NCBI RefSeq assembly: GCF_021869535.1
Contig: NW_026262669.1
Location: 7,688,001-7,752,000 of the forward strand
Length of the DNA stretch: 64,000 bases
Reading direction: 5' to 3'
Source of the DNA: Mytilus californianus
Lineage: Eukaryota
Part shown: positions 5,491-30,713 of the stretch, one piece after another
Layout: every line of letters starts with the position of its first letter
How positions within the stretch are numbered: position 1 is the stretch's first letter
The notes under the pieces: generated by a model
The model's database searches: none
The model's input: the letters and a program-made list of their open reading frames with translations, nothing else
Told to the model about the DNA's origin: nothing
Translations under genes and position numbers: made by a program

Positions 5491-6093
5491 GTGTCTTCCA
5501 TTGTTCAGAAGCATTGGAAAATTATAGAAAATGATTCAAATCTTAAAAAAGTATTTTCCTCACCACCAGTCATGGCCTTCAGAAGACCTAAAAACATCCG
5601 TGACAAATTAGTGACCTCTGTATTAGCAAAGCAGCCTACTTCATCTCCCGGTTGCTACAAACAATGTGGTCGAAGGAACTGCTTGTGTTGTAAAGCTGCC
5701 AATACAAGCAGTTCTTTCATCAGCTCCGTTACTAAACAAAATTATACCATCTACTCAAATTCCAACTGTAAAACGGAGAACTCAATTTATATATTAACAT
5801 GTGACACTTGTGGCATTCAGTATGTGGGAGAAACAATGGACAAATTTAATATTCGGCTCAATAACCATCGTTCATGGTACAAAACCAACAAAAACTGTCC
5901 TCTCACAAGACATCTTCGTTCAACGAAACATTCTTTTGATAATGTTACTTTTCAAATAATAGAAGTCAACACCGAGTGGGACACCACGGCGAGAAGGAGA
6001 AGAGAAAATTTTTGGATCCACCAACTCCACACTTTAGAACCTGATGGTCTTAACGAAAAAGATGAGAAAAGATACAGGAAAGATAAAGAATAA
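5491..6093 (+). CDS. Inverted duplicate of the GIY-YIG endonuclease region
   Basis: 200 aa identical to the end of the minus-strand ORF except E>K (CYEQC vs CYKQC). Confidence 0.85.
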   Translation: MSSIVQKHWKIIENDSNLKKVFSSPPVMAFRRPKNIRDKLVTSVLAKQPTSSPGCYKQCGRRNCLCCKAANTSSSFISSVTKQNYTIYSNSNCKTENSIYILTCDTCGIQYVGETMDKFNIRLNNHRSWYKTNKNCPLTRHLRSTKHSFDNVTFQIIEVNTEWDTTARRRRENFWIHQLHTLEPDGLNEKDEKRYRKDKE

Positions 6094-6597: not shown

Positions 6598-8492
6598 TCT
6601 AATAGGAAAGCTGATTAGAGAAAAGTGACAAATAGCCACGCCTACATTAAACTGATGTCCAATAAACTGCCTTCAGAAACATAAATTTCACAAATCAAAC
6701 ACGACAACAGAGATTTTGTTGCATATTTAATATTTAAAATTTGTTTATATATGTAATAAAACGTCATAAGTTTAATCGTGGGTAATTGTTGTGTACACTT
6801 CATGACTCTTCATAAGTAACGACATATCTGATAAATCCACTTAGGACAAAGATATGTCCTAAGATAATCGTTGGTCCTAGTCCTAGGTGCGCTTCGATAA
6901 ACAGGCCCCTGAATCAAACTCTCATTTTATACTGATAATATAAAACGTTACATGCAATTGTCCTCATCAATAAAACTGACCAATGTGAATTGTAGGAATA
7001 ATTCTATTTGGGACCTTACATTGTATAGCAGGTGGACAATTCCGTAAATTTAAACAAAATTCAAATTGTCGAAAAACCTCTGTGATTACGTACATGTGAA
7101 CATGTACATGCGCAGTGATCTTTAACATGTCGAATAACATATTCATTTGATTCTTTTTTAAAAGATGATGTAGTTAGTAAACAATTTTGGAATACAGCTG
7201 TCATTACATAGATCGAATAATCAGCATGCATTCATGTATACATTTACTTCTTCATATCAATAGTGTACGTCAACGCTCTAACATGTTGAGTATCTATGTG
7301 AACAGGTAATGCAATTATATATTCTTTTGAACATTTTTTTGTTTTTAGAATTAGAAAATATAAAGTAGACATATCCTTCGAACGCGCCGATCATTCTTAT
7401 TCTGTGTTTGCAAAAGTGGGATGCCGTTTTAAATTAAATATTTGCTTGTCAAACAGTTTGTTTTATTAAAGTTTAAAGTTGTGTGTGACGAAAATATCCT
7501 TCTCCGAAATAGGACCAAAAAAATTCAGATTGATAGTAAATAAAAAGCGTTGACGAACATTGACCAACTGCACAAAAATGCACTAATTACAGAAAAGGTG
7601 TTGCATGGTTAGTCTCATCGAATATCGATCGTTATGTTGGTCATGAAACTGATTTTGATTCTGATAGGATAATTGATATTTAATTGCATCGGCCCGATGA
7701 TGTGACTATTTTCGTCTTCTCTGTGTACCTACCTGCTTCTTCTCTCTCCATTGAATTGTTTAAAGAATAAGTAGATTTACTGCACGAACTGTATAGCGCC
7801 AAAATGGTATTGTAATTTTTTATGGTGATTTTAATACGAAAGTTCAAGGACCACGTGTCAGTTCCGTTCAAGACGATCGAAGCAAACTTTTGCAAAGAGT
7901 TTTAGATGATTCACTTTAGTTTTCATTAAGGCACTTGTTACGATTAACCGCAAAGTGTAGCAATAAGAACTAATTACTTTTTCGTCCAAGACTTACTGCC
8001 AAAATGTATTTCCGGACATGGAACTGATTTCATACGGAAATTGCAGGTAACAATAATACAAAATTTTACATACAATTTACAAATTATGTCTTTTTTGTAT
8101 GGAGCATCTTGATAAAATTGTACTGTCATTGCCACTATACGTTGTAAACGGTAAAGAGGTATTTTAGTATATTTGTATTATATTTGTAAGTTTGATATTT
8201 CTATATTTTAAATCATACTTTTTTATTTCAGAAGATATACTTAGATTTAATTTATATAGAAATATCAAACTTACACATATGAAATACAATACAGTACACA
8301 ACAAGTTCCCACAATTTAACTTATGACGTTTTATTAAATATATAAACGTTTTTCTAAATATTAAATACGCAACCATGCTCTGTTTCCGTGTTTAGTTTGT
8401 GAAATTTATGTTTCTGACGGCAGTTAATTGGACATCAGTTTAATGTAGGCGTGGCTATTTGTACCTTTTCTCTAATCAGCTGACCTGTTAGA
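6598..8492. repeat. Pair of ~115-bp inverted repeats (6598-6712 and 8378-8492)
   Basis: For example CAAATAGCCACGCCTACATTAAACTGATGTCCAAT versus its reverse complement at 8428-8462. About 90% identical by eye; no clear TSD. Confidence 0.8.
7585..7910 (+). pseudogene. Decayed LINE apurinic-type (APE) endonuclease fragment
   Basis: NYRKGVAWLVSSNIDRYVGHETDFDSDRIIDI*LHRPDDVTIFVFSVYLPASS...IFYGDFNTKVQG. The GVA, SDRI, VYLP and GDFN motifs are present, with stops and a frameshift. Confidence 0.65.
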
Positions 8493-13321: not shown

Positions 13322-14195
13322 TTTGTAATATGTGTTAGATTTTAATATAATTCTACTTTTTGGGAATGTGTGTTAGATTGTGAAATCCCACTTTTGGGTA
13401 ATATGCGTTAGACTTTGATATTTAATTTTTGAGTAATATACGTTAGATTGTGATATACCATTTTTTTTTATAATATTCGTTAGATTTTGACATTCCACTT
13501 TTGGAAATAAGCGTTAGGTTTTGATGTTCCATATTGAGGTTATACACTTCATTTTGAAATTCTACTTTTTGGGTAATGTGTGTTAGCTTGTGATATTCGA
13601 CTCTTTGGTAATATGCGTTAGATTTTGATTTTCCACTTTTTTAGGTAATATGCGTTAAATTTTTATATTCAACTTTCTGGTAATTTCGTTTGATTTTGAT
13701 ATTACACTTTTTGGGTAATATGCGTTAGGTTTTGATATTCCACTTTTGGAAAAAAGCGTTAGATTTTGATGTTCCATTTTTAGGTGATATAGGTAATTTC
13801 GAAATTCCACTTTTCGGGTAATATATGTTAGATTTTGATATTCTACTCTTTGGTAATATGCGTTAGATTTTGATATTCCACTTTGCTTGGTAATATGCGT
13901 TATATGTTGATATTCTCCTTTTTTGGGTAATGTGGGTTAGATTTTGATATTTACTTTATTGGTAATATGCGTTAGATTTTGATATTCCTTTTTTGGGTAA
14001 TATGCATTAGATTTTGATTTTCCACTTTTTGGTAATATGCGTTAGATTTTGATATTCCACTTTTCGGGTAAAATGCATTAAATTTTGATATTCCACATTT
14101 TGGTTATAGGCGTTAGATTTTTAAATTCCACTTTTTGGTAATATACGTTAGATTTTGATATCCCATTTTTTGGGGTAATATGCGTTTGATTTTGA
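13322..14195. repeat. Minisatellite, ~36-bp unit (GGTAATATGCGTTAGATTTTGATATTCCACTTTT), about 24 copies
   Basis: Directly visible tandem array with variable T-runs. Confidence 0.95.
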
Positions 14196-14320: not shown

Positions 14321-14630
14321 AATAGCAAAGAACCATCATATTACACAAGAAGGAAGTAGTACCTACTTTAAAAAAAATACTTGTTTAAACATTGAGCTAT
14401 ATTTTTACAGGATAGGGTCTAAAATACATTCTTCCTTTTTCTTTAGCTTTTATTAAAATATAATACAATACAAATTATTTTCTTCTTCAAAAGATTTTTA
14501 CTAAAAATTTCTGGTTCATGACAAGATGGCTAAAACAAAACATTTAACGGGGAAATGATTAACATTTCGGATATATAATGATCATATGTTACACATATTA
14601 CGCATATTTTGCAGCTTAACACCATTAGAT

Positions 14631-14688
14631 ATGGCTCTTCGAAACATCCTGTTTTTGCTAACTATCGTTGGAATTGCTTATTCACAAG
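14631..14688 (+). CDS. Secreted Cys-rich protein, coding exon 1 (signal peptide MALRNILFLLTIVGIAYSQ)
   Basis: ATG at 14631; n/h/c signal-peptide pattern ending in AYS-Q; phase-1 donor AAG|GTATGT at 14689. Confidence 0.8.
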
Positions 14689-16464
14689 GTATGTTGGCAT
14701 TAATTTGTTTCAAACTGTTTATCCCTGATTCAAGTTCATCATCAACATGTCTTATAGTACCAGAATAAACATTTTTAATGTTATCATCTTGTCGTTAAGA
14801 TGAATAAGTATGGATATGAAAGTACAAGAGGAAACCATTAAAATTAGAGATTACATTTAGGCATGGTTGGAAGTTCAAAATACCTATTTTGATAGCATGG
14901 TCGGAAATACCTACTGTCAATTGACAAAATGTTGATAATACCTTCTGCAATTTTGAGTCAACAATTGAGTCCTTGGCTTTGATTTATAGTTGGCTTTTTT
15001 ATTTATTGAAATCAGTGTTATACTTACCAAAGTATGATATTTCCAAGATATAGACAATATTCTTACAATGTAGGAAGATATACAATTTATTTGTAGGACA
15101 AACAAATTTTCCTACAATGTACGAATACTGTTTTTATTCTGCATTCTAACATCCTGAACATTTACGTTTTAAAGTAGTTTTTGTTACTTCCCAACAGTTG
15201 AATTTGTATCAACATGACTTAAATGCTGACCGCAATGAGAACCACAAAATGAAATGTGAGGTAAACGATAATTTAAACAGAACCGTTGGCTGAAAACAGA
15301 ATCAGGATACAAGGAGACTATAAACTTGTACTATACTTTTATCGTTTTATGTTATCTGTACTCCTGTACTTATATAGAAGAAAGGTCGATCGCAGCTTGA
15401 AATATAAAAACAGGATTTTATCGTTTTTAAGACTTTACTTTAAAATATAAGAACACCAATCACTAAAGCCACTGGATGTTTACGTACATGAGTACCATGA
15501 CGGGTGCCACGGAGCAGCTGTTTTTAACCCTGTTTTTGATGGGGTTCGTGTTTTTTTAATCTTTGATATTTCTATGTAGTGTTTAGGGGACTTGGTCTTC
15601 TTTTCGTCTCTTTCGTTTTTTTTTGTTATGTGCTATGGTATTGTCGGTTATTTTTAGTTGGTACCTTCTCATTTTACCCCGAGGAAATATTGTACGAAAA
15701 TTAAGATAATTTCTGTTTTTATTAAACATTCGCCCGCCTGCGATTAAACGTGGTGATATAGACTGTTCAACAAAGCAAATTGAAAAAAGTTAATGTTCTT
15801 CCAAGAAATGTTTCATAATATCAGTTATGACATTGTACTACGAAAAAAATACAATAACAATTAATCATTACATTGAACTTATATACGACTTTTGTTAGAA
15901 TTTCCTTAGTAATGCTTAAAAGGATGTTCCCTACTCTGTTTAAAAAAAACCAAGCTTTTTATAAGACTTATATAAATTGATAGCATATAAATACCGGAAC
16001 TAAAAAGCAGAACAAAATGAAGGGTTCGTGACCTTGTCTTTGAGATATAAGCCATTGACAATCTGGCGGGAAATTATTCTTTCTTGATTGTTCATACATT
16101 TACCATTGGCACCTTTTTTTCTTTCAAAAACTATGAAACATTAACAAGGATTTTATGAGATTTTCAAATATGGCTTTTTAAACTATATGTTATAAAATAA
16201 TGAAAGGAAAAGTAGGGGCTAGCGGGCAAAATATTTATCAGCACTATATGGATAAAACCAGAAATTCCGAATATCTGACAAAAACATGAGGAGCAAACAT
16301 CCTTAATGATTATTATTAATATGATACATTTATAAGTAGATGTTATCAGATATTCTTCAAATATGTGAAATAGCACTGCCGATATCATCAGCTAGTCTTT
16401 TATCAAGTCATCTTCAGGCTTGCTAGGGAAACAAAGAAAAACATACAAATACAATCCGGTAATT

Positions 16465-16590
16465 CGATTGTCTGGTTGTCTGCCTATCTATATAGGAAAA
16501 TATCAGCTGCGCTCACTCGACAAAAAAGCTTTATAGTGTGACTCGCAGCTGATATTTTACAATATCAATATGCAGACAACCTGACAATCG
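16465..16590. repeat. 126-bp fold-back (MITE-like hairpin)
   Basis: CGATTGTCTGGTTGTCTGC...AAAATATCAGCTGCG / CGCAGCTGATATTTT...GCAGACAACCTGACAATCG. Confidence 0.75.
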
Positions 16591-16679
16591 TTACATCTTT
16601 GGAAAGGAAAATACCACAATTATTCACCTTTTGATTTAAATATTTTCAGAAAAAGAAGGTTCATTATTTTTTTACAGCA

Positions 16680-17845
16680 CTGAGTCGATACCTCTGCAAG
16701 TGGACTATCAGGTCCCGAGGGTATCATCAGCTCAGTAGTCGGTACTTCGGTACTGACATGATTTATAACAATCCTTTCTGAAAGTGTGCGTTTATTTAAT
16801 TTTGAATTATAAAGAAACTATGTTCGGGTATTTCACATCCAATTTTTTATGGTAATATTCTTTACAAAGCACAACAATGTCAGTATTCACCTCAAAAGCT
16901 AACAAAACCTTTAAACAGACTTATTAAGAAGGGATATAGTTACAATACTGTTGTCAGGTCATTAAAAATCGCATATTTTGGCTTTAATATTGATTCACTT
17001 ATAGGGTCTTTGCATCGGAATTAAACATATTTATTCTAAAACCAGTTGTTGGCATGACACGGGTTATGTTCTTCTCATATAGTTTAGGACGGTATAATAC
17101 TAAACCCCTAACAGGAGGGATTGTGCCTGATATTCATATGATGAAGACATAATCTTTCAATCAGTTTAATTGAGGTCTGGAGCTGGCATGTCAGTAACTG
17201 CTAGTAGTCTGTTGTTATTTATGTATTATTGTCATTTTGTTTATTTTCTTTTGTTTCCTATTCCGATATCGGACTCGGACTTCTCTTAAACTGAGTTTTA
17301 CTGTGCGTACTGTTGTACGTTTGTTTTTTCTACATTGGCTAGAGGTATAGGGAGAGGGTTGAGATCTCAAAAAGACATGTTTAACCCCGCCGCATTTCTG
17401 CGCCTGTCCCAAGTCAGGAGCCTCTGGCCTTTGTTGGTCTTGTATCATTTTTAATTTTAGTTTCTTGTGTATAATTTGGAGTTTAGTATGACGTCCATTA
17501 TCACTGAACTAGTATACATATTTGTTTAGGGGCCAGCTGAAGGACGCCTCCGGGTGCGGGAGTTTCTCGCTGCATTGAAGACCCATTGGTGGCCTTCGGC
17601 TGTTGTCTGCTCTATGGTCGGGTTGTTGTCTCTTTGACACATTCCCCATTTCCATTCTCAATTTTATGGTTTCAACTCCCTCAGGCAAAAATGACCTAAG
17701 ATGGGTTTGGCTATATTTTTAAGGTATATTTTTGTCATATAGCTCTTCAACTTTTTCGGATCTTGCACATGCTTGGCTTTCAAATATTCGGCGGCTTTAA
17801 GCGTTCCTGATGAAGGTTTATCAAGAGAAGCGCTTCGAACGTTTT
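16680..17845 (+). mobile_element. Composite Penelope-associated repeat (RT tail remnant, family A module, hammerhead-like motif)
   Basis: 16870-17020 reads HLKS*QNL/TKPLNRLIKKGYSYNTVVRSLKIAYFGFNIDSLIGSLHRN* (with a frameshift), like a PLE RT end. Its sub-modules recur at 37683-38010 and 39370-39450 in reverse. Confidence 0.5.
17801..17841 (+). ncRNA. Hammerhead-like variant (class with A-GG...CC-A stem II), decayed copy
   Basis: GCGTTC-CTGATGA-AGGTTTATCAAGA-GAAGCGCTTC-GAACG; better-preserved copy at 37683-37724 (minus). Confidence 0.4.
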
Positions 17846-19444
17846 TTTTTTTTTTTTTTTCACTCGGCTGAAAATTTAGGTTGATCAACATTTGTGGTTA
17901 AACTATTTTACCAAAATATCTGAAATGTTAATCAGTTATCCGGTGACAAATCTGTCATACATACCAGGATAAGACCATACAAACGTAATATCAATAAAAA
18001 AAAACCTGCTTTGTACTACATTTTGTAGATCTATAAACTGATAAGGATTTGTATTGTGCTAGTTCAAAAGGTTATAATCCGCAAGATATGTCAACTTGCC
18101 TTATAATTCTATTTGAGTGAGCAATTGCCGGTCTGTGCATCTCCTCTAATTACCGTGTGTTTTGCGGAAACGCAGTGAAAAAATTGTGCAAGTCTTTGTG
18201 TTTGACTTGGCCGTGAATCAAACCAAATACCGTTACCAATAGACCACAGAGGCAGTTATATCTTCTTTTGAAATGAATTTGAAATTTAGAAACATTTGGT
18301 GCATAATGGGAGCCTAAGAAAATTAACTATTTAAAAAAAAAAGATGTGGTAGATCGCCAGTGAGGCAACTCTCCACCAGAGAAACCAAATGACATAGAAG
18401 TTAACAATTATAGATAACCATACGGCCTTCAATAATATCAAAACCCATGCCGCGTCGTCAGCTATAAAAGACCTTGCAATAACAAATGTAAAACAGTTCA
18501 AACGAGAAAACTAACGGCCTGATTTATGTACAAAACAATGAACGAAAAACAAATATGACAATTAACACCAAACGACAACCACTGAATTACAGGCTCCTGA
18601 CTTGGGACAGGCACATATAGAATATGTCAAATAAATATTGTGGCTGTTTCAACTAGTTTGCTGGCTCCATACCCAACCCTTAACATAAGACAGTGGTTTA
18701 ACAATACAACGTAAGTACAAACTATAAAAATCAGTAGAAAAGGGCTTAACTCATCAGATTGATTCAAAGCAAAAAAAAAAACAAAAACAAAACAAATCGA
18801 ACAAAAACACAGACTGGACGTGGCAGGGTATTTTTACAACCCCACAACAAAAAAGGATACCAAGTATAGATCTGTGAGTACTGGCAGTCGCACTGACAGC
18901 TAGTTCAAATCTAATAACAACTAATAAAAACATGAATCTAAGACCAAAAGATCAATCAGTACAACATCTAATGGATAAGGTAAAAAGACGGCAATAACAG
19001 TCAGAGAAAAACGGGACCTTGTGAAATGCTAATATACAGGTATCGACATTTTAGAGCCTTGATCGTGCATATGTTTATTACAATAAAACTTAATATGATT
19101 TTGATTTACTGATATTTATATCAAGAACACCAATATTCAAATATCTAATGACAGGGTTGAAAAGGTAACCTTTTAGAACAATTTTTTAAAGGATCGTTAG
19201 TTTCACCAAGATCGTGTCTATGGAAGAATTTAGTAAATATTTTAAGTAGTTTGTGGTAACGAAATCCCTGACTTAGTGATTAGCCTGTGATATAATTGCG
19301 AATGGAGACGGGGAATGTGTCAAATAGACACCAACCCGACAAAAGAGCAGAAAACAGCCCAAGACCATCAATGGGTCTTCAACGCTGCGAGAAAATTCCG
19401 AACCCAGAGGACTCCTTCAGCTGGTTCCTAAACAATAATGTATA

Positions 19445-20540
19445 CTAGTTCAGCGAAATGGACACTAACATACATAGATTACGGTCATTGAAATCCAAAT
19501 CGTCACTACGGACACGGACATAGCAAACAAGTTGTGATATATAAAAACCGTATGATGCTGTCAGAGGAAATACACCGACCATAAAAGGTAAATTAATAAT
19601 ATGGAACGAAAAATCGTCCTTTTTGTCGTAAATTTTTGTGTAGTTTCCCGTGTAAATCTGAAATAAAACTGAAATATCTAAATCTAGGAACATACAGTTA
19701 TTATTGTTTATATTTGATTTATTCAGTGTATGTGCCTTTTGTTAATTTCGGCAGTATACTAAAAACATTTTCTGTTTTTAAATGACAAAAACATATCATC
19801 AAGATAACGGTAAGTGTTTTTATTTATCATTTTAATGCAAATTTAATGAATTTGGCCATAGACAGTTACTAATAACAGTACAAGAACAAGTCTGCTATTA
19901 AAGGCGGACAATTGGTGCCCATAGGAATACATTCAACCTATGTTAAAGAACGTAATCTATTTAAAATATAAATGTTAATTCCACTATTTCCATATGTTTT
20001 ATTACAAAAGTTAATGATAAGTTGTTTGATAGTAGGTAAGGAACTAGTTAAAAGCACTGACAGATTAGTTGTAGAGCATTGACTAGAGGTTGAGATGAAA
20101 CGATCTTTTACAGATTGCTTTGTGTAGTTTGGGTAGCCAATACATAGTAGGCCCCAAGTTGTGACGTGGTTATGATATGATTGTTTACTATACGACTTTC
20201 TGTGGAGTGCACAGTACTTGAAGTTTGTTTCTTATTCTAGAAATAGACGTATTATGTACTCATATTTCTTAATTATTTTCAAAATGTGATAGCCACAACA
20301 TTCATACTTTTGTTTAGATAAACGTCTTGAAATTTTTTATCAGATTTTTACCATTTACACCGATTTTACAATACGATGAAAGAGCGTCTTTTATGACCTG
20401 AGGACACTGTTTTCAATCTGTTTTAGAATGAGGTCGATATTCTGGTCCTTTTGTCAAAAACCTTTTTACCTCTTGGTCTTGAACGATATGGAGGTCACCA
20501 GTAATTACATTGCAATTGGGATCATATCTCAAATTCGACG
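19445..20540 (-). pseudogene. Decayed Penelope-like reverse transcriptase (in intron 1, antisense)
   Basis: VITGDLHIVQDQEVKRFLTKGPEYRP; MYWLPKLHKAICKDRFISTSSQCSTT; IPMGTNCPPLIADLFLYCY; KIYDKKDDFSFHIINLPF...YGFYISQL. Confidence 0.8.
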
Positions 20541-21730
20541 GTTCACAGTCTCCATTTTTTTGGGTATTTTTTTATATTTTTCATGATGAAACGTGAAATT
20601 ACATACTGCAGTATTAGGCACAAATTACAAAAATTAAGTAACACTTACATGATTGATCATGTCATAATGATATAATTAGATATAAATATTACAATTGATT
20701 TTGTTACATTACATTCCCAAAAAATGTGAAAAAAAATTTCTCTGATTTCTGAACAAAATGTACATAGTTGAGATTCTTTTGATTTACATGGTAGAATCTT
20801 ATGAACAATCTTAAAATGAAAATTTTGTTAAAACGAATTTCTGGTTATAATAAAAGGCATGTAGGAATCTGATGTTCAGTAGTTGTCGTTTGTTGATGTG
20901 GTTCATAAGTGTTTCTCGTTTCTCGTTTTTTTATATAGATTAGGCTGTTGGTTTTCCCGTTTGAATGGTTTTACACTAGTAATTTTTTGGGGCCCTTTAT
21001 ATCTTACTTTTCGGTGTGAGCCAAGGCTCCGTGTTGAAGACCGTACTGTGACCTATAATGGTTTACTTTTATAAATTTTGACTTGGATGGAGAGTTGTCT
21101 CATTGGCACTCATACCACATCTTCTTATATCTATGTAGTAAATAGTATTCCAATCTTCAATCTTCATATTTAAATCTATTTGACATTTATTACGGGAAGA
21201 TAAAGCTTTATTATCTATCAAAAACAAATTTATAGAAAAATTTACAAGATCTCTCAAGTTACAATAGTATAAATGTTTACACTGACGTCTAATGTTGCTG
21301 AGGTATAATTAAAAATCAAACTGGTTTTTGTTTGTATGTATGAAAAAAGGTCCTTCTGTGTTATTAAAATATGGAGATATAAAGTTTAAAATGGTATTGA
21401 ACAGAAACATTTATCGAAATGTCCGGTGTTGGATAAGATTCCCAATACACCTTCATTTTTATATCACTTGGTCCTTATTCTTATTCTAATAGTGATAGCG
21501 ATATCATATGTTTTATCTTCCAATGAAGCATAACAATTATTAGGAAATGGCGTTTATGTATAGAACTTATAATATAATTACAGAACATGTACTCAGTATG
21601 AAAACATACAAACAGCGGTATATCCTTATAGTATAGTCTACTTCATCTAGGTTATAAGAAACAATGCATGGTACGCATCACATGTTTTACAATTACCCTT
21701 TACTTAGCCTTTATGACTTTTGTGATTGGA

Positions 21731-21774
21731 GCGTCCTTGGTGAGTCTTTTGAAGATCAAACGCGCTTCTGACGT
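21731..21774 (+). ncRNA. Decayed hammerhead motif
   Basis: GCGTCC-TTGGTGA-GTCTTTTGAAGAT-CAAAC-GCGC-TTC-TGACGT aligns to the 11533 and 54077 motifs but the core is mutated. Confidence 0.45.
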
Positions 21775-21942
21775 ACAGAAATTAAAGCTTGATATATATG
21801 ATCAGTTACATTACATGTTGTTGTGAATTGATATTTCTGCTTACTTGAGACATTTTAACATTTGTCTGTCTGGCATATGTTCTGTGTCATGTTTCTGACG
21901 CTTACACTTTTGACAATTACATATATCAATTTTGTTTTGCAG

Positions 21943-22129
21943 AAATACCTTCATGTTTGTATCCATGTGCTTGGAGAGGTGATGCTATTCCTCTTCTGAT
22001 AGAAAGAGAAAGTATATGGGTCATTAATACACCAACCGTCGGTATATATACAAATACATCGAGTCCAAAAGGAGATCAAAGAACAACATCTGAATGTATC
22101 ATGCGGGATGGACCTTTCTTCATAATAAG
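21943..22129 (+). CDS. Secreted Cys-rich protein, exon 2 (EIPSCLYPCAWRGDAIPLL...SECIMRDGPFFIIR)
   Basis: Acceptor TTTTGTTTTGCAG; 187 nt open in the phase dictated by exon 1 (phase 1 to 2); donor AAG|GTAGGA. Confidence 0.85.
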
Positions 22130-22642
22130 GTAGGATTTTAATTATTTATAAAGGTGGATATATACTCAAATCAAATATCCTTCTACATTCTCCAAGGCAA
22201 ATATTATCCTGGATTTTTGCAATTCCTTGATAAATGACATTTCGAAATCTTTTTGATGTAGGTCTACGATTTATAGGGTGCCTGACTAATTTTTGAATCT
22301 CAATACAGTAAATGCTGATTAATTAAGATATTTCAATAAAAGAAACATGAACATCACATGTAATGTGCATTCAAGAGATACGATTAAGTTCAGTTTTTAT
22401 CAACTTCCTTTTATATATATATTTCCAAAATGACTAATGCATAAAAAAAAGAATAATTCACCCTCCATTTTGTAACTGATTTTGCTTAAACGTTATGCAA
22501 TATCAGTGGAAAGTCAGTAAAGTGTATATCACTAACAAATGTAGTTATAAATCAAACAAGTCAAGTCGTACTGTCAACTATTATTTATGTCTCATATATG
22601 AAGGACCTTTCCTGAAGTCTATAAATCTGAACATCTTTTCAG

Positions 22643-22716
22643 AGGAGACGGAGTGTTTGCCTGCTTTAAATATATACCAATATCTGATACAGAATGGTAC
22701 TACTATATGACAGAAG
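22643..22716 (+). CDS. Secreted Cys-rich protein, exon 3 (RGDGVFACFKYIPISDTEWYYYMTE)
   Basis: Acceptor CTTTTCAG; 74 nt open, phase 2 to 1; donor AAG|GTATTG. Confidence 0.85.
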
Positions 22717-23349
22717 GTATTGATATATAGTTTTACACTTAATTGTTATTAATTACAAATGAAGTAGTAAGTAGGAAACTGATCAGGAACGGTATCCTCT
22801 ATATTGTACTACATTCAATTCAAAATACAGAAGCATTTACCACATTGTAACATATAAAATATAAAAATTACAAAGGCCAAGGATAATCAAAAACGGAAAG
22901 CCCTCTATCAAATGGCAACACCAAAAGCTCAATCAATCACACGAATGGAAAACAATTGTCTGATAATCTTGAATAAGTTTCATTTGATTTGCAATGTACT
23001 ATTACATTTTCGATTATACTTCAATTTATATTTGGCTATTCTTTTTTATTTCCTTTTTTTTTTGTCATGTAGCTTCTGACGTTTCTATGAATTAATACAT
23101 CACTGGCTTTCAAACGTTTTTTGACATAAAACTCTTTGATTATACCAGACAAGGAGTTGAAGAGAGACAACTCTTGCATATTTTATACTAGTAGTTTCAT
23201 AGAATGAATCAATATATATGGGCGGAAGCCTTTACTTTTAATAAAAAATGTTTGTTCAATTTATTTACACAAAATGGATCTTCATTACCCAATTCATTGT
23301 AAATAGGTTGTTACTGCTTATATTTATTGTATTTGTATAGAGAACTTCG

Positions 23350-25250
23350 GTGAATTACTGCATTCGAAAAACATTTCCAAAATACAGAACTCCCCAGCCC
23401 ATCAACTGGAAAAAGAACTTCAGGTTACTGATGTATGCAGTTGAAAACTATGCTAGAAAATGGGTAAAGCGCATTCAGAAACTACGATGTTCTATGAACA
23501 CAAGGGTGTCTAACCCATTCAAGAATCCGGAGGTTGTGGTTGATTTATCCTCTTTGCATGACAAATATGTCGTTGTTCCAGCAGATAAAGCCTCCAATAA
23601 TATTGTCTTCGTATGTAAAAACCATTATTTGCAATGTCTCACAGAAGAGCTCGGAATAAAAAGCACAACTGGTAATCCTACATATTCTTTAATATCATTT
23701 ACAAAGGATGAAATTTTACAAAATCACACATCTGTCCTTCTTTCATTTGGTATTAACATCAAAGAAAACGAAGAAAATCTACCGGCATTATACTGGATAC
23801 CAAAACTTCACAAAACTCCGTATAAAGAACGATACATAGCTGGATCTTCAAGATGTTCGACTTAACATCTTTCTAAAGTGTTGACTACTATTCTTTTTAC
23901 AGTAAAAGATGGCCTTCAAAAATATTGTGACTAGATATATTCAACCAGTGTTGTCAATCAGATGCGGATTCTCAAAAATTCTAAAGATTTACTCATTAAA
24001 CAGAGCTTTTTCTATAAAAATAGGAATCGTAGATTTAAAAATTTCTTGTTTTGGGTTATTATAATTCTTATTTTGTGAAGAACCACACTGATTCTATCAG
24101 AAAATACAGTGAAGATGATATTATCAAAATGCTGGACTTTTTAATCGACAATATATTTGTTGAGTTTGGAGGATTGATATTTCAACAGACAGTCGGTATT
24201 CCAATGGGTTCTAATTGTTCAACCCTTCTGGCCGACTTGTTTGTGTACTCGTATGAAGCAGAATTCATTCAGAACCTTCTAAAAGACAAAAAGAAAAAGC
24301 ACCTTGCTAAATTCCTTAATTTTACTTTCAGATATATTGATGATGTCCTATCACTGAATAACCAATATTTCAGTCATTACTTGCATCTCATATATCCCAG
24401 TGAACTTGAAATTAAGGATACTACTGATACAGGAAGGACTGCTTCATACCTTGATCTTTTCCTCAATATTGACAGAGATAAACGACTTCACACTAAAATC
24501 TATGACAAACGGGATGATTTCAACTTCCCAATTGTCAATTTCCCATTTATTAGCAGTAACATACCCTCAGCTCCTTCGAATGGTGTTTACATATCTCAAT
24601 TGATACGTTATGCTCGAGCATGTTCACACTATGCTGACTTCATATACATGAGTGTGCTTCTTACGCAGAAACTGCTCCAACAGAGTTATGAGAAGGAAAG
24701 ATTAAAAATGACACTCCGTAAATTTTATGGGACACCATCACGAATTGGTTGATCTTTACGATGCATTTTTACCACGTCTAAGATTGTGGTTTAACATCTA
24801 TGTCGTCTGTCTGCTAAGTACCGAACGTGACCTATTTCCGAATATGACTGTTATACCGAGTGTGAATTTGCATTGCTATACGACGTGTCTCGGTATTTTG
24901 TACATCCAACATTCATGTATTTATTTTTGAAGTTTTTGTTATGGTTTCGGTTGAATAATGTTTTATGTATTATCGTGTGTTGTCCAAATAAGTATAAAAT
25001 TGCCTTTCAATACCATCATTGTCATATTTGAGAATATGACTGTTATACCGAGTATGAATTTGCATTGCTATACGACGTGTCTCGGTATTTTGTACATCCA
25101 ACATTCATGTATTTATTTTTGATGTTTGATGGTTTCGGTTGGATAATGTGTTATGTCTTATCGTTTGTAGTCCAATATCATCATTGTCATGAAAATTGTT
25201 TAGGCGAGTATTGTGAAAATAATTGTATAAAGTTCGAAATTGCATGTTAG
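23350..25250 (+). mobile_element. Decayed Penelope-like retroelement (RT plus 3' UTR) in intron 3
   Basis: FPKYRTPQPINWKKNF; VVVPADKASNNIVFVCK; LYWIPKLHK; QQTVGIPMGSNCS; FRYIDDVLSLNN; KIYDKRDDFNF. Interrupted by stops and frameshifts; the 3' UTR has a 190-bp-period tandem duplication (24840 and 25030). Confidence 0.9.
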
Positions 25251-25419
25251 TTACGTAAGCGCATCATTGTTTGTGATATCCTGTGGTGTTTGTCGTTGAT
25301 TGAATATGTTCGTTGTTGTTCTGTGGTTTGCATGTTGTGTTGACTATTATATTATTTGTTTGTACGTTTCTCTGTGATGAATGTTCTTGCGTGTGTTTGT
25401 GCTGTTTTTTTGTAACGTA

Positions 25420-25740
25420 GTGTTGTCATTTTAGCTATAATTTTTAACATTGTCATAAAGCGGAAGGTTTGGCTAGCCATTAAACCAGGTTCAACTCACC
25501 ATTTTTTCTTAAAATGTCCTGTACCAAGTCGGGAATATGGCATTTGTTATCAAATAGTTTGTTTCTATGTATGTTGGCGTTTGGTTTTTTTTTTGCACTT
25601 CAGTGTTCCTGTTGTTCCTTTGTTTTCCTCTTATAGTTGATGTGTTTCCCTCGGTTTTAGTTTGTAACCCGGATTTGTTTTCCCTCAATCGATTTATGAC
25701 TTTTGAACACCGGTATACTACTGTTGCCTTTATTTATAAA
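25420..25740 (-). repeat. Interspersed repeat family B (AATAAAGGCAACAGTAGTATACCGCTGTTC...)
   Basis: Other copies at 34040-34410 (+), 44760-45130 (+), 59740-60130 (+); partial copies at 11017-11100, 47540-47640 and 50695-50765. Confidence 0.8.
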
Positions 25741-26136
25741 TTACAAGGTGTTCTTTGTCGATAAATTGCATGTTTCATTTAATAGTATGTGGCTAGCGTG
25801 TTGAACCTTGTAAGCAATGTCATGAATACTTGAGATATAGTTATGGTATTTTGATAGTTTGCTGGACTTGCATCGTCAGTTAAACTTAGTTTCAACTGAT
25901 TGAAAATAGCTTATATACATTCCTTCCATATTCGTCGTCTCTTGCTTTTCTTTTATATTCAGGATGTGACAAAAATAAAGAAATTTACAGATTTTCTTAT
26001 ATAAATTATATAATTGTATTATATAAATATATTTGTGTTTTAAATTTCGATTTGCATTACGAATTAAATTTCCGTTTTTGATTCTACTCTATTTAACTCA
26101 ATTATCCATTTTTGCCATAATGATATAATTTTGCAG

Positions 26137-26208
26137 CCAGTGCGGATCTGAAGGACTTCTGTACTCTGTGTGATGGTACCAAAATGGCTGGTCCGTTTTA
26201 TATGACAG
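26137..26208 (+). CDS. Secreted Cys-rich protein, exon 4 (ASADLKDFCTLCDGTKMAGPFYMT)
   Basis: Acceptor TTTTGCAG; 72 nt open, phase 1 to 1; donor CAG|GTAATA. Confidence 0.8.
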
Positions 26209-27074
26209 GTAATATACAAACTTTAGTATTTTATCACAACACAAGTAACTTATTTGCATCTATTTTTGTGAAATAATCTACTTTTTATCCTTTGATAAGA
26301 ATCTGTTTAATTGTTCCAAACATGCATGTTTCCAAATATTTTTTTACAAACATATACATTTCGGTTACGTCATGGATGTTCATATCCATTGCATTAATTG
26401 GATTAACAACACTCTAGCATTTTAAACAAACTAAATGCGTTGTTCTTTTGTTTTATGTTACAATAACGCAAGTGCAGGGAGTAATTTTGAGTGAGCATTT
26501 TTAGTTATAAATTTCATAATGGGTGAGCATTTGATACGCTTGATAACAATTCAAGTTATTTGATTTCAATATAATAGTAAACGATCCTTTGGAAACTTTT
26601 TTTATCATTATTGAAATCACTTAACGAGTTTTGATATCATGCGATATCCAATTTTGACAAGTTGTTTAAACAATTTTTTTTCCTAGGGTAAACATTATCT
26701 TTGTCCTGTTGAAATAATGTGATCAATTAAAATATAAGACCGCTTAAGGTATTGAGAATATTGTTTCAATATCCATGCCTACTGTTAACTTCAAATATTG
26801 TCAACTTTTTTTACGCTCAGAAAATGGAATGGAATGGGAGATTATTGACATTTAATATGCATCTTTGACATGACGTATAGCCAATATCAATGAAGTGATT
26901 TGTATCCCATTGCAGAATAGGCCAACTCAATTTACGCATTTTTCGTATCACTTATTTATATTACACTCCGTTAAATGTGATACAATTGATGAATACTAAT
27001 GCGGAAAATAGATAACAGGCCACAACCAGATTTAAAAAATCAACCTTTTCTTACTTATCCATAGCAAACGTATG

Positions 27075-27440
27075 CATATTGATGTTCCTTTTCTTTCCTT
27101 GTTTCCAAAATAAAACACATTATACTATTAAAGCAGAAGGAACTTTGAAGAGGGTTGATTATTCCATTGATATCGTCTATCTCTTTTTCTATAATCTAAA
27201 GGTCAACTATTAAGTGCCGAGAAATATTGAAAATCGTAACAAACTTATAGATATTGATGCTCCTTTGCATTCCTTGATATCCAAAAATAGTACAAACTAT
27301 ATATTTGATCTATTAAAACATAAGGGACTTTTGTCTTGAGATGTTCGATTATTACATTGATATCTGCTATCTCTTTTATACAATCTAAAATTTATCTATC
27401 AAGTGCTGAGAAATATTCAAAATCATAGCAAACTTATAAA
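27075..27440. repeat. Old tandem duplication, ~175-bp period
   Basis: ATATTGATGTTCCTTT...AAGTGCCGAGAAATATTGAAAATCGTAACAAACTTATA repeated as ATATTGATGCTCCTTT...AAGTGCTGAGAAATATTCAAAATCATAGCAAACTTATA. Confidence 0.65.
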
Positions 27441-28972
27441 TAAATATCTTGGACAATATTCGTCATAAAAAAATTGGGAAGCTATGTTTCAATGTATGTG
27501 TATGTTTATATACATTGACGATCAAAGAATCTTGCAAAATTCAATAAATAATATACAGAAAGAACATTGAAGTTCATTTAGATAATACACTATTTACCTA
27601 TGTGATATATAAATGAAGGACTTTCACTAAGTCAATACGTTGTATTTTGAATAGTGTGTTAGAATATATTGACACAAGAACCTTGTCCTCGATCAATATA
27701 ATCTGAAAAAGGTTCGTATATTTTACTGACCTCGTTAAAAGTCTATAAAAGTGGGACGAAATATACCAGAGGGACAGTCAAACTCATAGATCGAAAACAA
27801 ACTGACAACGCCATGGCCAAAAATAAAAAGAGAAAAACTGACAAATAATAGTACAGATGACACAACATAGAAAACTAAAGACTAAGCAACACGAACCCCA
27901 CCAAAAACTGTTAATTATGTATAATTAATACATATTGTTTTGTTACCTTGAATTCGAAAATAACAAAATAGTATAAATCTATCATATAACACCCTTCTGA
28001 TCTTCATGAAACATAAGTTAATAACATACTCGTATTTCTTTTTTTAATTTTATCTAATAAACATGATATATTTGAATTTAGTTTAAACAATATTTTTCAA
28101 AAGTGCACAAATTACAATTATACAAAGAAATATAGGGATTCGGAAACAAGAGGAACTTATGTAAATTCGTTTCCTTATGAGGGAAATATTTGTGTTTAGT
28201 ATTCATTATTGTCTACACCTCTTGCATATAATGCAAAACTACCAAAATACAACCCCAATGAAGACCAGGTCAACAACATACTACCTTAATAAAGATCAGG
28301 TGAAAACATACAACCTCAATAAAAATCAGGTCAACAAAAACAACCTCAATAAGGATGAGGTCAACAATATTAAGATATGAGCCAATGCTTTACCAAAAAC
28401 AAAAACAAAAAAATAAGGCTACAATAAGTCTAACTCAATGATAAAAATACATATATAAGATATGTTAGGGTCATTCTTTGGCTCAATTCTTTTTTGTCAA
28501 AACAAATAAGCATGTTTAGTTCAAATATGTCATGGTGAACACCAATGACGTCTCAGCATGAAATTTATCAGTATATCATGACTGATATAATTTTGAAAGG
28601 CGTAGATAATTTAATTAATTTTGAAATTTCAGAAGCCAAATAATGGCCCATATAATTAAACATTTGAACAGTCTTCTTGTTTTTTTAAGAAAATAACCTA
28701 AATGGATTGTATAGCAGGCTAAAGGCTAAATATACCCTCTCCAAAAATAAGACTAATGATGCACCATTTGGAGTTTATATTTCTCTAATTTTCATGCTTT
28801 TTCACATTTCTCGATAGGTGTGAGAAAAATATTTTTCGTTTCTATAGAAAACTTTGTTCTCGGCAATTGATTGGTCGAAATTTAATTATGACGTCAAATT
28901 TTCTTGGAATGTATATTTAAATATTATTTAATCATCGTGCTTATCATTATCTTCTCATTTCATTTTTAACAG

Positions 28973-28978
28973 CTGGTA
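28973..28978 (+). CDS. Candidate 6-nt micro-exon (CTGGTA) of the secreted-protein gene
   Basis: Long pyrimidine tract TTATCTTCTCATTTCATTTTTAACAG|CTGGTA|GTAAGTATG; frame-preserving, phase 1 to 1. Confidence 0.4.
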
Positions 28979-29753
28979 GTAAGTATGTTTAAATTACATT
29001 ATTTATTATAATTACAAACAACTTTTTATATATTTGTATTTGTGAATATACATGCAGTATAAAAATAAACGGTAGGACGCATGGTATAGACATGCAAATG
29101 TTGATGTGTGTTTGCACGTAACACAAAATTAACAGACCCATATTTTGCCTGAACAAAGTCAGGCTTCATTATTTTTTATTGTTTGTATATTAGAATAGAA
29201 ACATGTGGTACAATTGCCAATAAGCCAATTATCTCTCTGTGTTAAATGGAATGTTTATCAGTTTTCTGTTCAAAGAATTCGGGTGTTTTTGAATGAGGTG
29301 ATGTGTTATTGATTACATTATTATTTGGTGATTACAGATATCATTGTTTTTTTCTTTTTACCAAATTTTTAGAATTTTAATGGATCAATTTAAGAATATA
29401 ATGTTTATGAACATAGTTGCCTAACAGTAAGCACGTTTTGATTGGCATTGATGGTTATAGCGAATTTGTTGTCTCTGAGGTACAAATTATTTCTTGGGTC
29501 AAGGCAATAGTAGATAGCTAAAAAACAACAAACTCACCAGTTGTTCAGTGTTTTTTGTAACTAACCAAGAACACTCTTAAAGTAACCTCCATACACTATC
29601 CTACAAACAGACATGTTGTATAAGAATACATTATTGTCCGTTTGTTGTTTGTATACATTAGATTTACCGTTATCTTGATTGTGATCCTTGTGTTAAAATT
29701 TGCATTTACATATTTGCACTTACTATATATTACCATACTCTACATTATACTCA

Positions 29754-30001
29754 GAGGTGCCTCGGTGGTCGAGTGTTCTAAGTAGTCGAGCTTCTGATCA
29801 CTGACATGTCAACATTGAGTTTGAATCCCGAACGAGTCAGGTGTGCTCAATTTCAATCTTAATTTCCTAGGATTGTAAGTTTTCCTACCGAAGATCGGTG
29901 GTTCTCTCCGCTGCATCCCGACTTCCTTAACCAATAAAAACTGACCAACACGAAATAACACAATAATGCTGAAAGTGGGGCTAAACACTAATCAATTAAT
30001 C
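29754..30001 (+). mobile_element. tRNA-derived SINE
   Basis: A-box-like TGGTCGAGTGT (29766), B-box-like GTTTGAATCC (29819), core GGTGGTTCTCTCCG...CCAATAAAAACTGACC and an (AATC)-like tail. Confidence 0.7.
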
Positions 30002-30369
30002 AGTATTCACAGAAAAAGAAAACGAGAAATAACCCAAAAGCACGCTGTTATCATGTCTTACTTTTTTCTTTTCATATATATTTTAATAAAATATGAATTC
30101 TCATGAATAAGGAGACAGACACCTACAGTTAACTTTTTTTACTGTATATTCGATAATTTCAATGTTTTCTTTCCATTTGAAACACCAATATTCACTGAAG
30201 TCATTTTCGGCACAAAAAAAAAATTAGTATGAACGTGTCTGTAAAATATGAATTCAACACTATTTACAAAGGTAATAGTCTTAGGAACTATTGACTGGCA
30301 AATAGTCTCTGAACGGACTATGGAATGAATAGCACGAAAAGTATATAAAAAACTGTAAAAGCTATATTT

Positions 30370-30433
30370 TATTATTATTATTGTTATTATAATAATTATT
30401 ATTATTATTCTTATTATTATTATTATTATTATT
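30370..30433. repeat. (ATT)n microsatellite
   Basis: Imperfect ATT run ending 37 nt before the predicted terminal-exon acceptor. Confidence 0.95.
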
Positions 30434-30470
30434 AACTTTAAATGAACCATTCAAGGCAGACCATCGTCAG

Positions 30471-30658
30471 CTGATAGAACTAAACCAATCGGCTGTACTC
30501 GGCCTTTTACATGTCAGAGCAAAAACAACCAACAGGTGTGCTGTTCTGATGAGGAACCATTCGACAGTGGAATGAACTGTAAACGGCAACACCATAACAG
30601 ACGACAGAGTAGATATAGGTCATATGGTAGATATAGGTCATCCAAATCAGCTCATTAA
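30471..30658 (+). CDS. Secreted Cys-rich protein, probable terminal exon (DRTKPIGCTRPFTCQSKNNQQVCCSDEEPFDSGMNCKRQHHNRRQSRYRSYGRYRSSKSAH*)
   Basis: Locally GC-richer open frame of 61 codons in phase 1 after acceptor TCAG|30471 (alternative AAG|30456, same phase); five Cys; TAA at 30656-30658; AATAAA 50 nt downstream. Confidence 0.65.
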
Positions 30659-30707: not shown

Positions 30708-30713
30708 AATAAA
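30708..30713 (+). terminator. Probable polyadenylation signal
   Basis: AATAAA 50 nt after the predicted stop; a second AATAAA lies near 30742. Confidence 0.45.

What the first reader, a model, noticed from the sequence alone, without database searches (positions are those of the whole stretch)
14631..30658. Uncharacterised ~194-aa secreted Cys-rich protein gene invisible to the ORF track
Five exons (six with the micro-exon) with canonical GT-AG sites join with compatible phases (1, 2, 1, 1, 1) into MALRNILFLLTIVGIAYSQ-EIPSCLYPCAWRGDAIPLLIERESIWVINTPTVGIYTNTSSPKGDQRTTSECIMRDGPFFIIRGDGVFACFKYIPISDTEWYYYMTEASADLKDFCTLCDGTKMAGPFYMT(AG)TDRTKPIGCTRPFTCQSKNNQQVCCSDEEPFDSGMNCKRQHHNRRQSRYRSYGRYRSSKSAH. 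It has a signal peptide, 11 Cys, an N-glycosylation sequon (NTS at residue 57), a beta-strand-like aromatic-rich core starting CxxPxxWxG, and a separate C-terminal Cys cluster. I cannot assign it to a named family. It may be a lineage-restricted extracellular protein (shell, byssus, mucus or immune role are all unproven possibilities).
Basis: partly seen in the sequence, partly recalled or inferred. Interest (0 to 1): 0.72.

Follow-up and report, generated by a model that had tools for sequence, protein, structure and literature searches.

The report
Unannotated mussel secreted barrel-protein gene
This is a real, spliced mussel gene for a small secreted, disulfide-rich protein from an uncharacterised family seen so far only in Mytilus; its relatives' models look like a lipocalin-type beta-barrel, and its function is untested.

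Summary
The exons exist as described, all with GT-AG sites and the stated phases. A poly(A) RNA contig about 95-99% identical to the window joins coding exons 2-3-4. One correction: the last acceptor is at 30456, not 30471, so the product has 199 aa, not about 194. A non-coding 5' exon ends at 7305. That RNA contig skips the ATG/signal-peptide exon, which rests on homology only. One sampled RNA run of the window's own species gave no reads on coding exons 2-4.

The gene belongs to a multigene family. A tandem array of nine or so collinear paralogues, plus one outlying copy, lies on another contig, and more distant clades lie elsewhere. In 1.84 billion representative proteins, every named hit is a Mytilus "uncharacterised protein"; a few unnamed contig-derived hits could not be assigned to a species.

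There is no Pfam or PDB sequence match. AlphaFold models of two homologues both resemble eight-stranded lipocalin-like barrels (best Z 8.2). TIMP/NTR folds do not appear among the top matches.

Most likely it is a secreted barrel-type binding protein with a small Cys-rich C-terminal module and a strongly cationic Arg/Tyr/Ser tail.

The parts
7273..7305 (+). 3' end of a non-coding 5' exon; its start is unknown. Donor CAG|gtaatg at 7305/7306.
   Evidence: The 30-nt 5' loose end of RNA contig X1, plus CAG, matches here at 25/30 and is followed by a GT donor. By eye, the same exon is read as N-terminal extension in the M. edulis model P0009 (..SNNLRLFGN|S vs window ..SNMLSIYVN|S). The in-frame ATG at 7283 is absent from the X1 sequence, so I read this exon as UTR.
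14615..14688 (+). ATG / signal-peptide exon. Acceptor ttttgcag|CTT, ATG at 14631, 19 codons plus 1 nt, donor AAG|gtatgt, phase 1.
   Evidence: Sequence. It is 15/23 identical to the N-terminus of P0009, including five residues upstream of the Met (E 8e-07). No RNA seen here confirms it: contig X1 joins the 5' exon directly to 21943.
21943..22129 (+). Coding exon: CxxxC motif, conserved N-x-S sequon, ECxxRxGPF motif. Phase 1 in, 2 out.
   Evidence: RNA contig X1 piece 21940-22127, with a 2-3 nt boundary ambiguity. Ten paralogous matches at 53-66% identity. Splice sites.
22643..22716 (+). Coding exon (..CFK..SDTEWYYY..). Phase 2 in, 1 out.
   Evidence: It is contiguous with the neighbouring exons in RNA contig X1. 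Paralogue matches are collinear.
26137..26208 (+). Coding exon (..FCxLCDG..GPFY..). Phase 1 in, 1 out.
   Evidence: It is contiguous in RNA contig X1, with 1 difference in 74 nt. Paralogue matches are collinear.
28973..28978 (+). 6-nt micro-exon CTGGTA, phase 1 to 1. It adds Ala-Gly and turns the next split codon into Ser.
   Evidence: The loose end of X1 behind 26208 reads CTGGTA and then GCAGACCATCG... There is a single site in the intron, with ttttaacag| and |gtaagt flanks; my estimate of the chance expectation for that 10-mer in this intron is about 0.002. The distant paralogue P0016 encodes the same linker with three phase-1 micro-exons of 15, 18 and 12 nt.
30456..30658 (+). Last coding exon: linker RPSSADR, PIGC Cys module, cationic tail, stop TAA at 30656-30658. 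The transcript runs to at least 30678. AATAAA lies at 30708-30713.
Evidence: The X1 loose end fixes the acceptor at aag|GCAGACC, i.e. 30456. Nine paralogue matches.

Best explanation
A seven-exon gene with six coding exons, spanning at least 7.3-30.7 kb of the window, encodes a 199-aa secretory protein. It belongs to an unnamed multigene family so far found only in Mytilus.

Architecture:
- a 19-residue signal peptide; by the -3/-1 rule, cleavage probably falls after AYS;
- a domain of about 110 residues pinned by six invariant cysteines (CxxxC .. EC .. C-x-K .. CxxC). In models of two homologues this folds as an eight-stranded up-and-down beta-barrel of the lipocalin/calycin type;
- a short linker encoded partly by a 6-nt micro-exon;
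- a small Cys-rich module (PIGC..C..CC..C);
- a 25-residue tail with net charge +9, rich in Arg, Ser and Tyr.

Shown:
- the exon structure;
- splicing of four junctions in poly(A) RNA of a near-identical allele or close relative;
- retention of all ten family-invariant residues;
- family membership.

Inferred:
- The protein is secreted.
- The barrel acts as a binding module for a small ligand or a protein partner.
- The cationic tail holds it on anionic extracellular material such as matrix, byssus, shell organics or microbial surfaces.

The confidence value refers to the combined claim of real gene, this family and barrel-type secreted binder. The specific binding-and-anchoring mechanism alone I put at about 0.3.
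For: - **Gene model:** exons, phases and GT-AG sites are. RNA contig X1 joins coding exons 2-3-4, the micro-exon and the last exon; the DNA control run X3 shows no such joints. The micro-exon site is unique.
- **Paralogues:** collinear copies have the same exon order and donor positions.
- **Homologues:** annotated Mytilus homologues join the exons identically (P0001, P0005, P0008, P0009).
- **Conservation:** invariant residues C, C, C, R, G, F, C, K, C, C across 24 sequences are all present in the window's exons.
- **Signal exon:** homologous to the N-terminus of P0009.
- **Fold:** the P0022 model has pLDDT 79.6 and pTM 0.77. Its best structural matches are Tp0751 (Z 8.2, rmsd 2.8 over 94 residues), OmCI (7.2) and ERABP (7.1), and about 45 of the top 50 are lipocalin-like barrels. 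The independent P0001 model gives the same ranking at lower confidence.
- **Tail composition:**
Against: - **No RNA for the ATG exon or from the window's own species:** the only RNA contig found skips the ATG exon and has no in-frame start upstream of coding exon 2. That isoform cannot make the secreted protein. RNA run X6 of the window's own species gave no reads on the three exons laid (6% of the run read). Twelve further runs labelled with that species hold none of the sampled words.
- **X1 may be another species:** it differs from the window by about 5% in coding exon 2 and 17% in the 5' exon, so it may be another allele or a sister species.
- **Weak fold matches:** Z is 5-8 and Foldseek E is about 0.1. 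The tool itself warns that this range may mean only a common arrangement.
- **Fold shown for homologues only:** the window's own joined protein was not folded.
- **Lipocalin features missing:** no lipocalin sequence motif or Pfam hit.
- **Odd Cys number:** 11 cysteines leave one unpaired.
- **No functional data** of any kind.
Confidence: 0.6

Rival explanations
1. A TIMP/NTR-like metalloproteinase inhibitor. On this reading the family is a divergent branch of the tissue-inhibitor-of-metalloproteinase expansion known in pteriomorph bivalves, and blocks a metzincin protease with its N-terminal Cys region.
For: - UniProt names one distant member (A0A8B6BKG2, in the P0019 cluster) 'NTR domain-containing protein'.
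- In the distant clades the first Cys follows the predicted signal peptide directly, and there are 12 Cys in two modules of TIMP-like size.
- TIMPs are greatly expanded and diverse in Pteriomorphia, with shell, byssus and immune roles (PMC10755359).
- Potempin E, a beta-barrel protease inhibitor, is among the structural matches (Z 6.7).
Against: - No Pfam TIMP or NTR hit at E up to 10 on the exons or on ten family members.
- No TIMP or NTR chain among the top 50 of 48,161 chains for either model, so Z is below 5.
- The motif is CxxxC, not CxC.
- The window copy and its clade carry four or more residues before the first Cys. From established TIMP biochemistry, such an extension abolishes MMP inhibition.
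- The window protein has 11 Cys, not 12.
Confidence: 0.07
2. This copy is transcriptionally silent or non-productive in this genome: an intact-looking but unused paralogue, or a locus whose transcripts skip the start-codon exon.
For: - X6 gave no reads on the exons, and the other runs of the same species label hold no words.
- The one RNA contig lacks the ATG exon.
- No identical protein from this species turned up, although its RefSeq proteins are in the database. P0016 matches the genome exactly exon by exon.
- Several array paralogues carry stop codons.
Against: - All six coding exons are open, all twelve splice sites are canonical, and all ten invariant residues are kept.
- The ATG exon is conserved with M. 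edulis and M. galloprovincialis models.
- Only 6% of one run was read, tissues are unknown, and contig assemblies drop rare isoforms.
Confidence: 0.13
3. A byssal, adhesive or matrix component. The Arg/Tyr/Gly-rich cationic tail would behave like the small foot protein mfp-3 (Tyr to DOPA, cation-assisted adhesion), and the barrel would be a cargo or cross-linking domain.
For: - Tails in the clade are Arg/Tyr/Gly/Asn-rich with net charge +6 to +14, for example RYRYNR..RYGK..GYGYRK in the array copies.
- From my memory only, this composition resembles mfp-3.
- The family is Mytilus-restricted and tandemly amplified, like the foot-protein genes.
Against: - There is no tissue or proteome evidence.
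- The tail is absent from several distant clades (P0022-P0025), so it is an add-on and not the family's core function.
- The window copy's tail is Ser/His-rich with only 3 Tyr and 1 Gly.
- No paper mentions any family accession.
Confidence: 0.12
4. An immune effector. On this reading it is a secreted pattern-binding or antimicrobial protein whose cationic tail, possibly released at the KR/RR dibasic sites, attacks microbial membranes.
For: - The tail is strongly cationic, with dibasic sites directly after the last Cys.
- The family is lineage-restricted and tandemly duplicated, and some copies are pseudogenised. That pattern is typical of Mytilus immune gene families (CRP-I and myticalin papers listed; titles and abstracts only).
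Against: - There are no expression or challenge data.
- The architecture differs from known Mytilus AMP precursors.
- The structured domains are the conserved part; the tail is not.
Confidence: 0.08

Closest known systems
Mytilus 'uncharacterized protein' models P0008/P0009 (M. edulis) and P0010 (M. galloprovincialis)
   Same: They share the signal peptide, the GIPSCxYPCAWRGDAIP.. start, the Cys framework, the exon joins and the KRQHH.. tail start. The window gene is their best match in this genome.
   Different: Identity is only 62-75% per exon. Their models lack the 6-nt micro-exon. P0008 has a spurious 118-aa N-terminus, and P0009 reads through into the intron after the fourth coding exon.
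Tandem-array paralogues (contig C121, 71.92-72.13 Mb) and their orthologues P0001, P0005, P0006
   Same: Same exon order, donor positions, ten conserved Cys, N-x-S sequon and PIGC module, plus a cationic Tyr/Arg tail.
   Different: Identity is 45-66%. They have no micro-exon, a longer Gly/Tyr-rich tail and a different signal peptide. Several copies carry stop codons.
Lipocalin / calycin beta-barrels (Tp0751 pallilysin 5JK2, tick OmCI 5HCC, ERABP 1EPA, ApoD, RBP4)
   Same: All are secreted. The homologue models show an eight-stranded antiparallel barrel with a short N-terminal helix. Z is 6-8 over 94-110 residues, and lipocalin-type barrels fill the hit lists of two independent models.
   Different: No sequence similarity, no GxW/SCR motifs and no Pfam lipocalin hit. 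The disulfide pattern differs (six Cys in the barrel). There is an extra Cys-rich C-terminal module and a tail. Z is below the level that proves common ancestry.
TIMP / NTR module proteins
   Same: Similar size, a two-module Cys-rich secreted layout, an expansion in pteriomorph bivalves, and a database label on one distant member.
   Different: The defining features tested here were not met; see the membership test.

Membership tests
Unnamed Mytilus CxxxC / ECxxRxGPF / PxGC secreted-protein family | N-terminal signal peptide on its own exon, joined in phase 1 | tested here: met
   ATG exon 14615-14688. It has a hydrophobic core and is 15/23 identical to P0009. SignalP was not run.
Unnamed Mytilus CxxxC / ECxxRxGPF / PxGC secreted-protein family | Ten invariant residues of the N-domain (C, C, C, R, G, F, C, K, C, C) | tested here: met
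   The invariant columns come from the 24-sequence alignment A4. All are present in the window's exons.
Unnamed Mytilus CxxxC / ECxxRxGPF / PxGC secreted-protein family | C-terminal P-x-G-C Cys module on the last exon | tested here: met
   KPIGC..C..CC..C in 30456-30655. It aligns with P0008 and the paralogues.
Unnamed Mytilus CxxxC / ECxxRxGPF / PxGC secreted-protein family | Conserved exon order and intron phases | tested here: met
   The exon hits are collinear on about ten loci. The donor positions are the same. P0016 also has phase-1 micro-exons in the linker.
Lipocalin / calycin | Eight-stranded antiparallel beta-barrel | tested here: inconclusive
   The test used models of homologues, not the window protein. 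Best Z is 8.2 and 6.3, and lipocalin-like chains dominate the top 50. Foldseek E is only about 0.1.
Lipocalin / calycin | Sequence signature (Pfam lipocalin models; GxW in the first strand) | tested here: not met
   No Pfam hit at E up to 10. The Trp of the IW motif is not conserved in the distant clades.
Lipocalin / calycin | Binds a ligand in the barrel cavity | not testable with these tools
   This needs recombinant protein and binding assays.
TIMP / NTR | Match to the TIMP or NTR profile | tested here: not met
   No Pfam TIMP or NTR hit at E up to 10. The PDB sequence profile search found no TIMP. The PROSITE label seen in UniProt for one member could not be re-run.
TIMP / NTR | Mature N-terminus begins with Cys1 in a C-x-C motif | tested here: not met
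   In the window protein the signal peptide ends ..AYSQ, and E-I-P-S precedes the first Cys. The motif is C-x-x-x-C.
TIMP / NTR | OB-fold N-domain | tested here: not met
   No TIMP or NTR chain is in the top 50 of 48,161 representatives for either model.
DUF7042/7043/7044 animal proteins | Match to the Pfam model or a profile match | tested here: not met
   The Atlas feature score is only 0.83. PF23069 hits other loci of this genome, none in the window or the array. hhalign probability against a DUF7043 protein of this genome is 0.3%.

The most novel reading that the evidence does not exclude
The family is a Mytilus-born (or there unrecognisably diverged) class of disulfide-locked lipocalin-like barrels. 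Each barrel is fused, through a linker built from phase-1 micro-exons, to a small Cys-knot-like module and to interchangeable cationic Tyr/Arg tails. On this reading it is a modular kit in which one binding barrel is targeted to different extracellular surfaces (byssus or plaque, shell matrix, microbes) by tail swapping among tandem copies.
Probability: 0.15. Interest if true: 0.6.

Novelty: new variant of a known kind. Interest (0 to 1): 0.36.

Why it matters
Mussels owe much of their biology (wet adhesion, shell building, strong mucosal immunity) to lineage-restricted secreted protein families, many of them still unnamed.

This locus adds a correctly spliced model for one such gene, including a verified 6-nt micro-exon. 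The gene appears to be missing from the protein set of its own genome.

The work ties about ten array copies and several distant clades into one family. It also gives the family a first structural hypothesis: a lipocalin-like barrel, a Cys module and a cationic tail.

That makes the family testable by tissue expression, proteomics, ligand screens and structure determination.

It is not a surprise to a specialist. Homologues already sit in databases as hypothetical proteins, and no function is shown here.

Tried and rejected
- **Pfam.** Nothing on the four large exon peptides or on ten family members.
- **PDB sequence profile.** Only chance hits, to an antibody heavy chain and the oestrogen receptor.
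- **TIMP/NTR reading.** Prompted by a UniProt label. Rejected on profile, N-terminal motif and fold.
- **DUF7042-44 lead from the protein atlas.** Rejected.
Rejected in favour of 30456, on the RNA contig and on homology.
- **Upstream ATG at 7283 as start codon.** Rejected, because it is absent from the X1 sequence.
- **Raw RNA reads of the species' own run X6.** No reads fell on the exons; they fell only on the repeat in the intron.
- **Third word search, with the wide alignment.** No new members.
- **Literature search by accession.** No paper found.
- The joined 199-aa model was not built, searched, folded or passed to a signal-peptide predictor. All searches were exon by exon by reference. 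The fold rests on the database homologues P0001 and P0022.
- **dN/dS.** Not attempted: the paralogues are too diverged, and no orthologue DNA was at hand.
Full report
**Observation**

Reading the boundaries base by base gives the following:

| Exon | Coordinates | Boundaries |
|---|---|---|
| ATG exon | 14615-14688 (ATG at 14631) | donor AAG\|gtatgt |
| Coding exon 2 | 21943-22129 | ttttgcag\| ... AAG\|gtagga |
| Coding exon 3 | 22643-22716 | ttttcag\| ... AAG\|gtattg |
| Coding exon 4 | 26137-26208 | ttttgcag\| ... CAG\|gtaata |
| Last exon | ends at TAA 30656-30658 | |

The 11 cysteines, the NTS sequon at N57 and the CLYPCAWRG start are all there.

**RNA evidence**

Only one read-laying run was allowed, limited to 6,000 letters, so I laid four runs on 21750-27700.

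Run X1 is a poly(A) RNA-seq library labelled 'invertebrate metagenome' (2016). It holds a 595-nt contig at depth 26. Consecutive letters of that contig lie on 21940-22127, 22641-22714 and 26135-26208. That is coding exons 2, 3 and 4 joined at the predicted GT-AG sites; the 2-3 nt offsets are letters that fit both sides.

Behind 26208 the contig runs on with CTGGTA and then GCAGACCATCGTCAGCTGATAGAA. The second part is the window from 30456. CTGGTA occurs exactly once in the intron, at 28973-28978, between ttttaacag and gtaagt.

The junction reads YMT-A-G-S-RPSSADRTKP, and the CDS is 58+187+74+72+6+200 = 597 nt, or 199 aa. Homology agrees: the extra PSSADR stretch aligns with PSSSDR of the M. 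edulis protein P0008.

The DNA control run X3 covers the stretch at normal depth and shows no exon joints.

**The 5' end**

They match window 7273-7302 at 25/30, followed by CAG|gtaatg. I estimate the chance of such a match in the window at about 4e-6.

This is a non-coding 5' exon. The M. edulis model P0009 reads the same exon as an N-terminal extension and then continues through ..SLTILE-MDLRIPLLLLTIAGIVYS. The window's ATG exon matches that at 15/23, including residues upstream of the Met (E 8e-07). It also has an acceptor, ttttgcag|CTT, at 14615.

So the gene has seven exons. The signal-peptide exon is supported by cross-species conservation. The only RNA contig I could see skips it, and as it stands has no in-frame start.

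Run X6 holds raw RNA reads of the window's own species; 6% of the run was read. It put no reads on the three exons laid. Twelve further runs with that species label hold none of the sampled words.

X1 differs from the window by about 5% in coding exon 2. It may therefore be a divergent allele or a sister species. Expression of this very allele is not shown.

**Family**

Searching the window's own genome exon by exon finds the four larger coding exons again. They lie in the same order and orientation on nine or so loci within 206 kb of contig C121 (71.92-72.13 Mb), plus one at 69.66 Mb. Exon-2 identity is 53-66%, and a few copies carry stop codons. Similarity starts and stops at the splice sites, and the donor positions are the same.

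Word searches and one exhaustive HMMER profile search of 1.84 billion representatives found 19 relatives. All that carry a name come from Mytilus edulis, galloprovincialis, trossulus, coruscus or californianus, and are called uncharacterised or hypothetical.

Full-length models (P0001, P0005, P0006) join the exons exactly as here. P0008, P0009 and P0010 are the closest, at 62-75%, and the window gene is their best match in this genome.

More distant clades (P0015, P0016, P0019, P0022-P0025) share:
- a first Cys right after the signal peptide;
- CxFPC, ECxxRxGPF, YxCxK and LCxxC;
- a PxGCNxPxxCPI..CxGCE..DDGxCC module.

Ten residues are invariant across 24 sequences, and the window keeps all of them.

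P0016 is a RefSeq protein of M. californianus. Its exons match this genome exactly. The assembly size also fits my memory of that species' reference. Yet no identical protein for the window gene or for the array copies came back. They appear to be unannotated there, although the search has limits.

In the P0016 gene, the linker between the N-domain and the Cys module is encoded by three phase-1 micro-exons of 15, 18 and 12 nt, each with AG/GT flanks. The window's 6-nt micro-exon therefore sits in a family-typical place.

**Named families**

- Pfam gives nothing, even at E 10.
- The PDB sequence profile gives nothing credible.
- UniProt labels one distant member as NTR-domain-containing. TIMP expansions are well known in pteriomorph bivalves (PMC10755359). 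But the TIMP/NTR profiles do not hit, the motif is CxxxC, and the window clade has residues before the first Cys. No TIMP or NTR chain appears in the top 50 structural matches.
- An atlas lead to DUF7042-44 (score 0.83) failed both the HMM test and the profile test.

**Fold**

Two AlphaFold jobs were run on homologues from different clades:

| First sequence | pLDDT | pTM |
|---|---|---|
| P0001 | 60 | 0.55 |
| P0022 | 79.6 | 0.77 |

Both models show a short N-terminal helix, eight strands, and a short helix at the CxxC.

Exhaustive structural alignment ranks lipocalin-type barrels first in both cases:
- For P0022: Tp0751 at Z 8.2 (rmsd 2.8, 94 residues), OmCI 7.2, ERABP 7.1, potempin E 6.7, and ApoD and RBP4 at 6.5. 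About 45 of the top 50 are lipocalin-like barrels.
- For P0001 the best Z is 6.3, with the same kinds of match.
- Foldseek agrees in kind but weakly, with E about 0.1.

This supports a calycin-like barrel as topology. It does not show common descent. The C-terminal module is confidently modelled in P0022 but could not be searched alone.

**Mechanism**

I commit to the following. The protein is secreted. Its disulfide-locked barrel binds a ligand or partner. Its C-terminal Cys module and its tail (net +9, Arg/Ser/Tyr-rich) hold it on anionic extracellular material.

Rivals:
- a TIMP-like inhibitor (0.07);
- a silent or non-productive copy (0.13);
- a byssal or adhesive role through an mfp-3-like tail (0.12; the resemblance is from memory only);
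- an immune effector (0.08).

The last two are specialisations of the main reading, not contradictions of it.

**Verdict**

The finding is a good gene call with one wrong acceptor. The gene is a new, apparently unannotated member of an uncharacterised Mytilus-restricted family, and the family now has a structural hypothesis. It is moderately interesting and not categorically new.

**Limits**

Noticed in passing
window 4375-5409 (-) and 5491-6093 (+): Two head-to-head ORFs with GIY-YIG nuclease domains (Penelope-like retroelement remains) lie about 1.2 kb upstream of the gene's 5' exon.
   Followed up: partly
window 23340-25930 (intron between coding exons 3 and 4): A very high-copy repeat with a weak reverse-transcriptase ORF (24051-24752). 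DNA contig depth reaches about 2.5 million, against about 90 for unique sequence. It is transcribed on both strands in RNA run X6, with sharp read ends near 25482 and 25737.
   Followed up: partly
window 45676-47283 (-): A 535-aa ORF with a full RVT_1 reverse-transcriptase domain (E 2.5e-30), i.e. another retroelement.
   Followed up: no
window 22716 / 26137-26208 (run X2): The 513-nt contig of run X2 covers coding exons 2 and 3. It shows no depth on exon 26137-26208, although about 236 nt follow. The length would fit skipping of that 72-nt, frame-preserving exon, but the relevant rows were not shown.
   Followed up: no
G000:C121:71.92-72.13 Mb and 69.66 Mb: A tandem array of nine or so paralogues spaced about 20-25 kb apart, plus one inverted outlier. 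At least three exons carry in-frame stops (72110029, 72047764, 69660361), so the array mixes intact and decaying copies.
   Followed up: partly
L042 (G000:C35:7340800-7348800, minus strand): The RefSeq gene LOC127723090 (P0016) encodes residues 132-147 with three consecutive phase-1 micro-exons of 15, 18 and 12 nt. A partial second copy of the GCNRPMNC segment lies about 50 nt upstream of the last exon.
   Followed up: yes
protein cluster of P0019: The 90% cluster of this family member also contains dCTP pyrophosphatase 1 proteins. The probable link is a fused 420-aa M. coruscus model (P0040). That suggests the two genes are neighbours and were merged by an annotator.
   Followed up: no
window 14000-14195: A 35-bp tandem repeat (5.5 copies, 82% matches) lies about 420 bp upstream of the ATG exon.
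   Followed up: no
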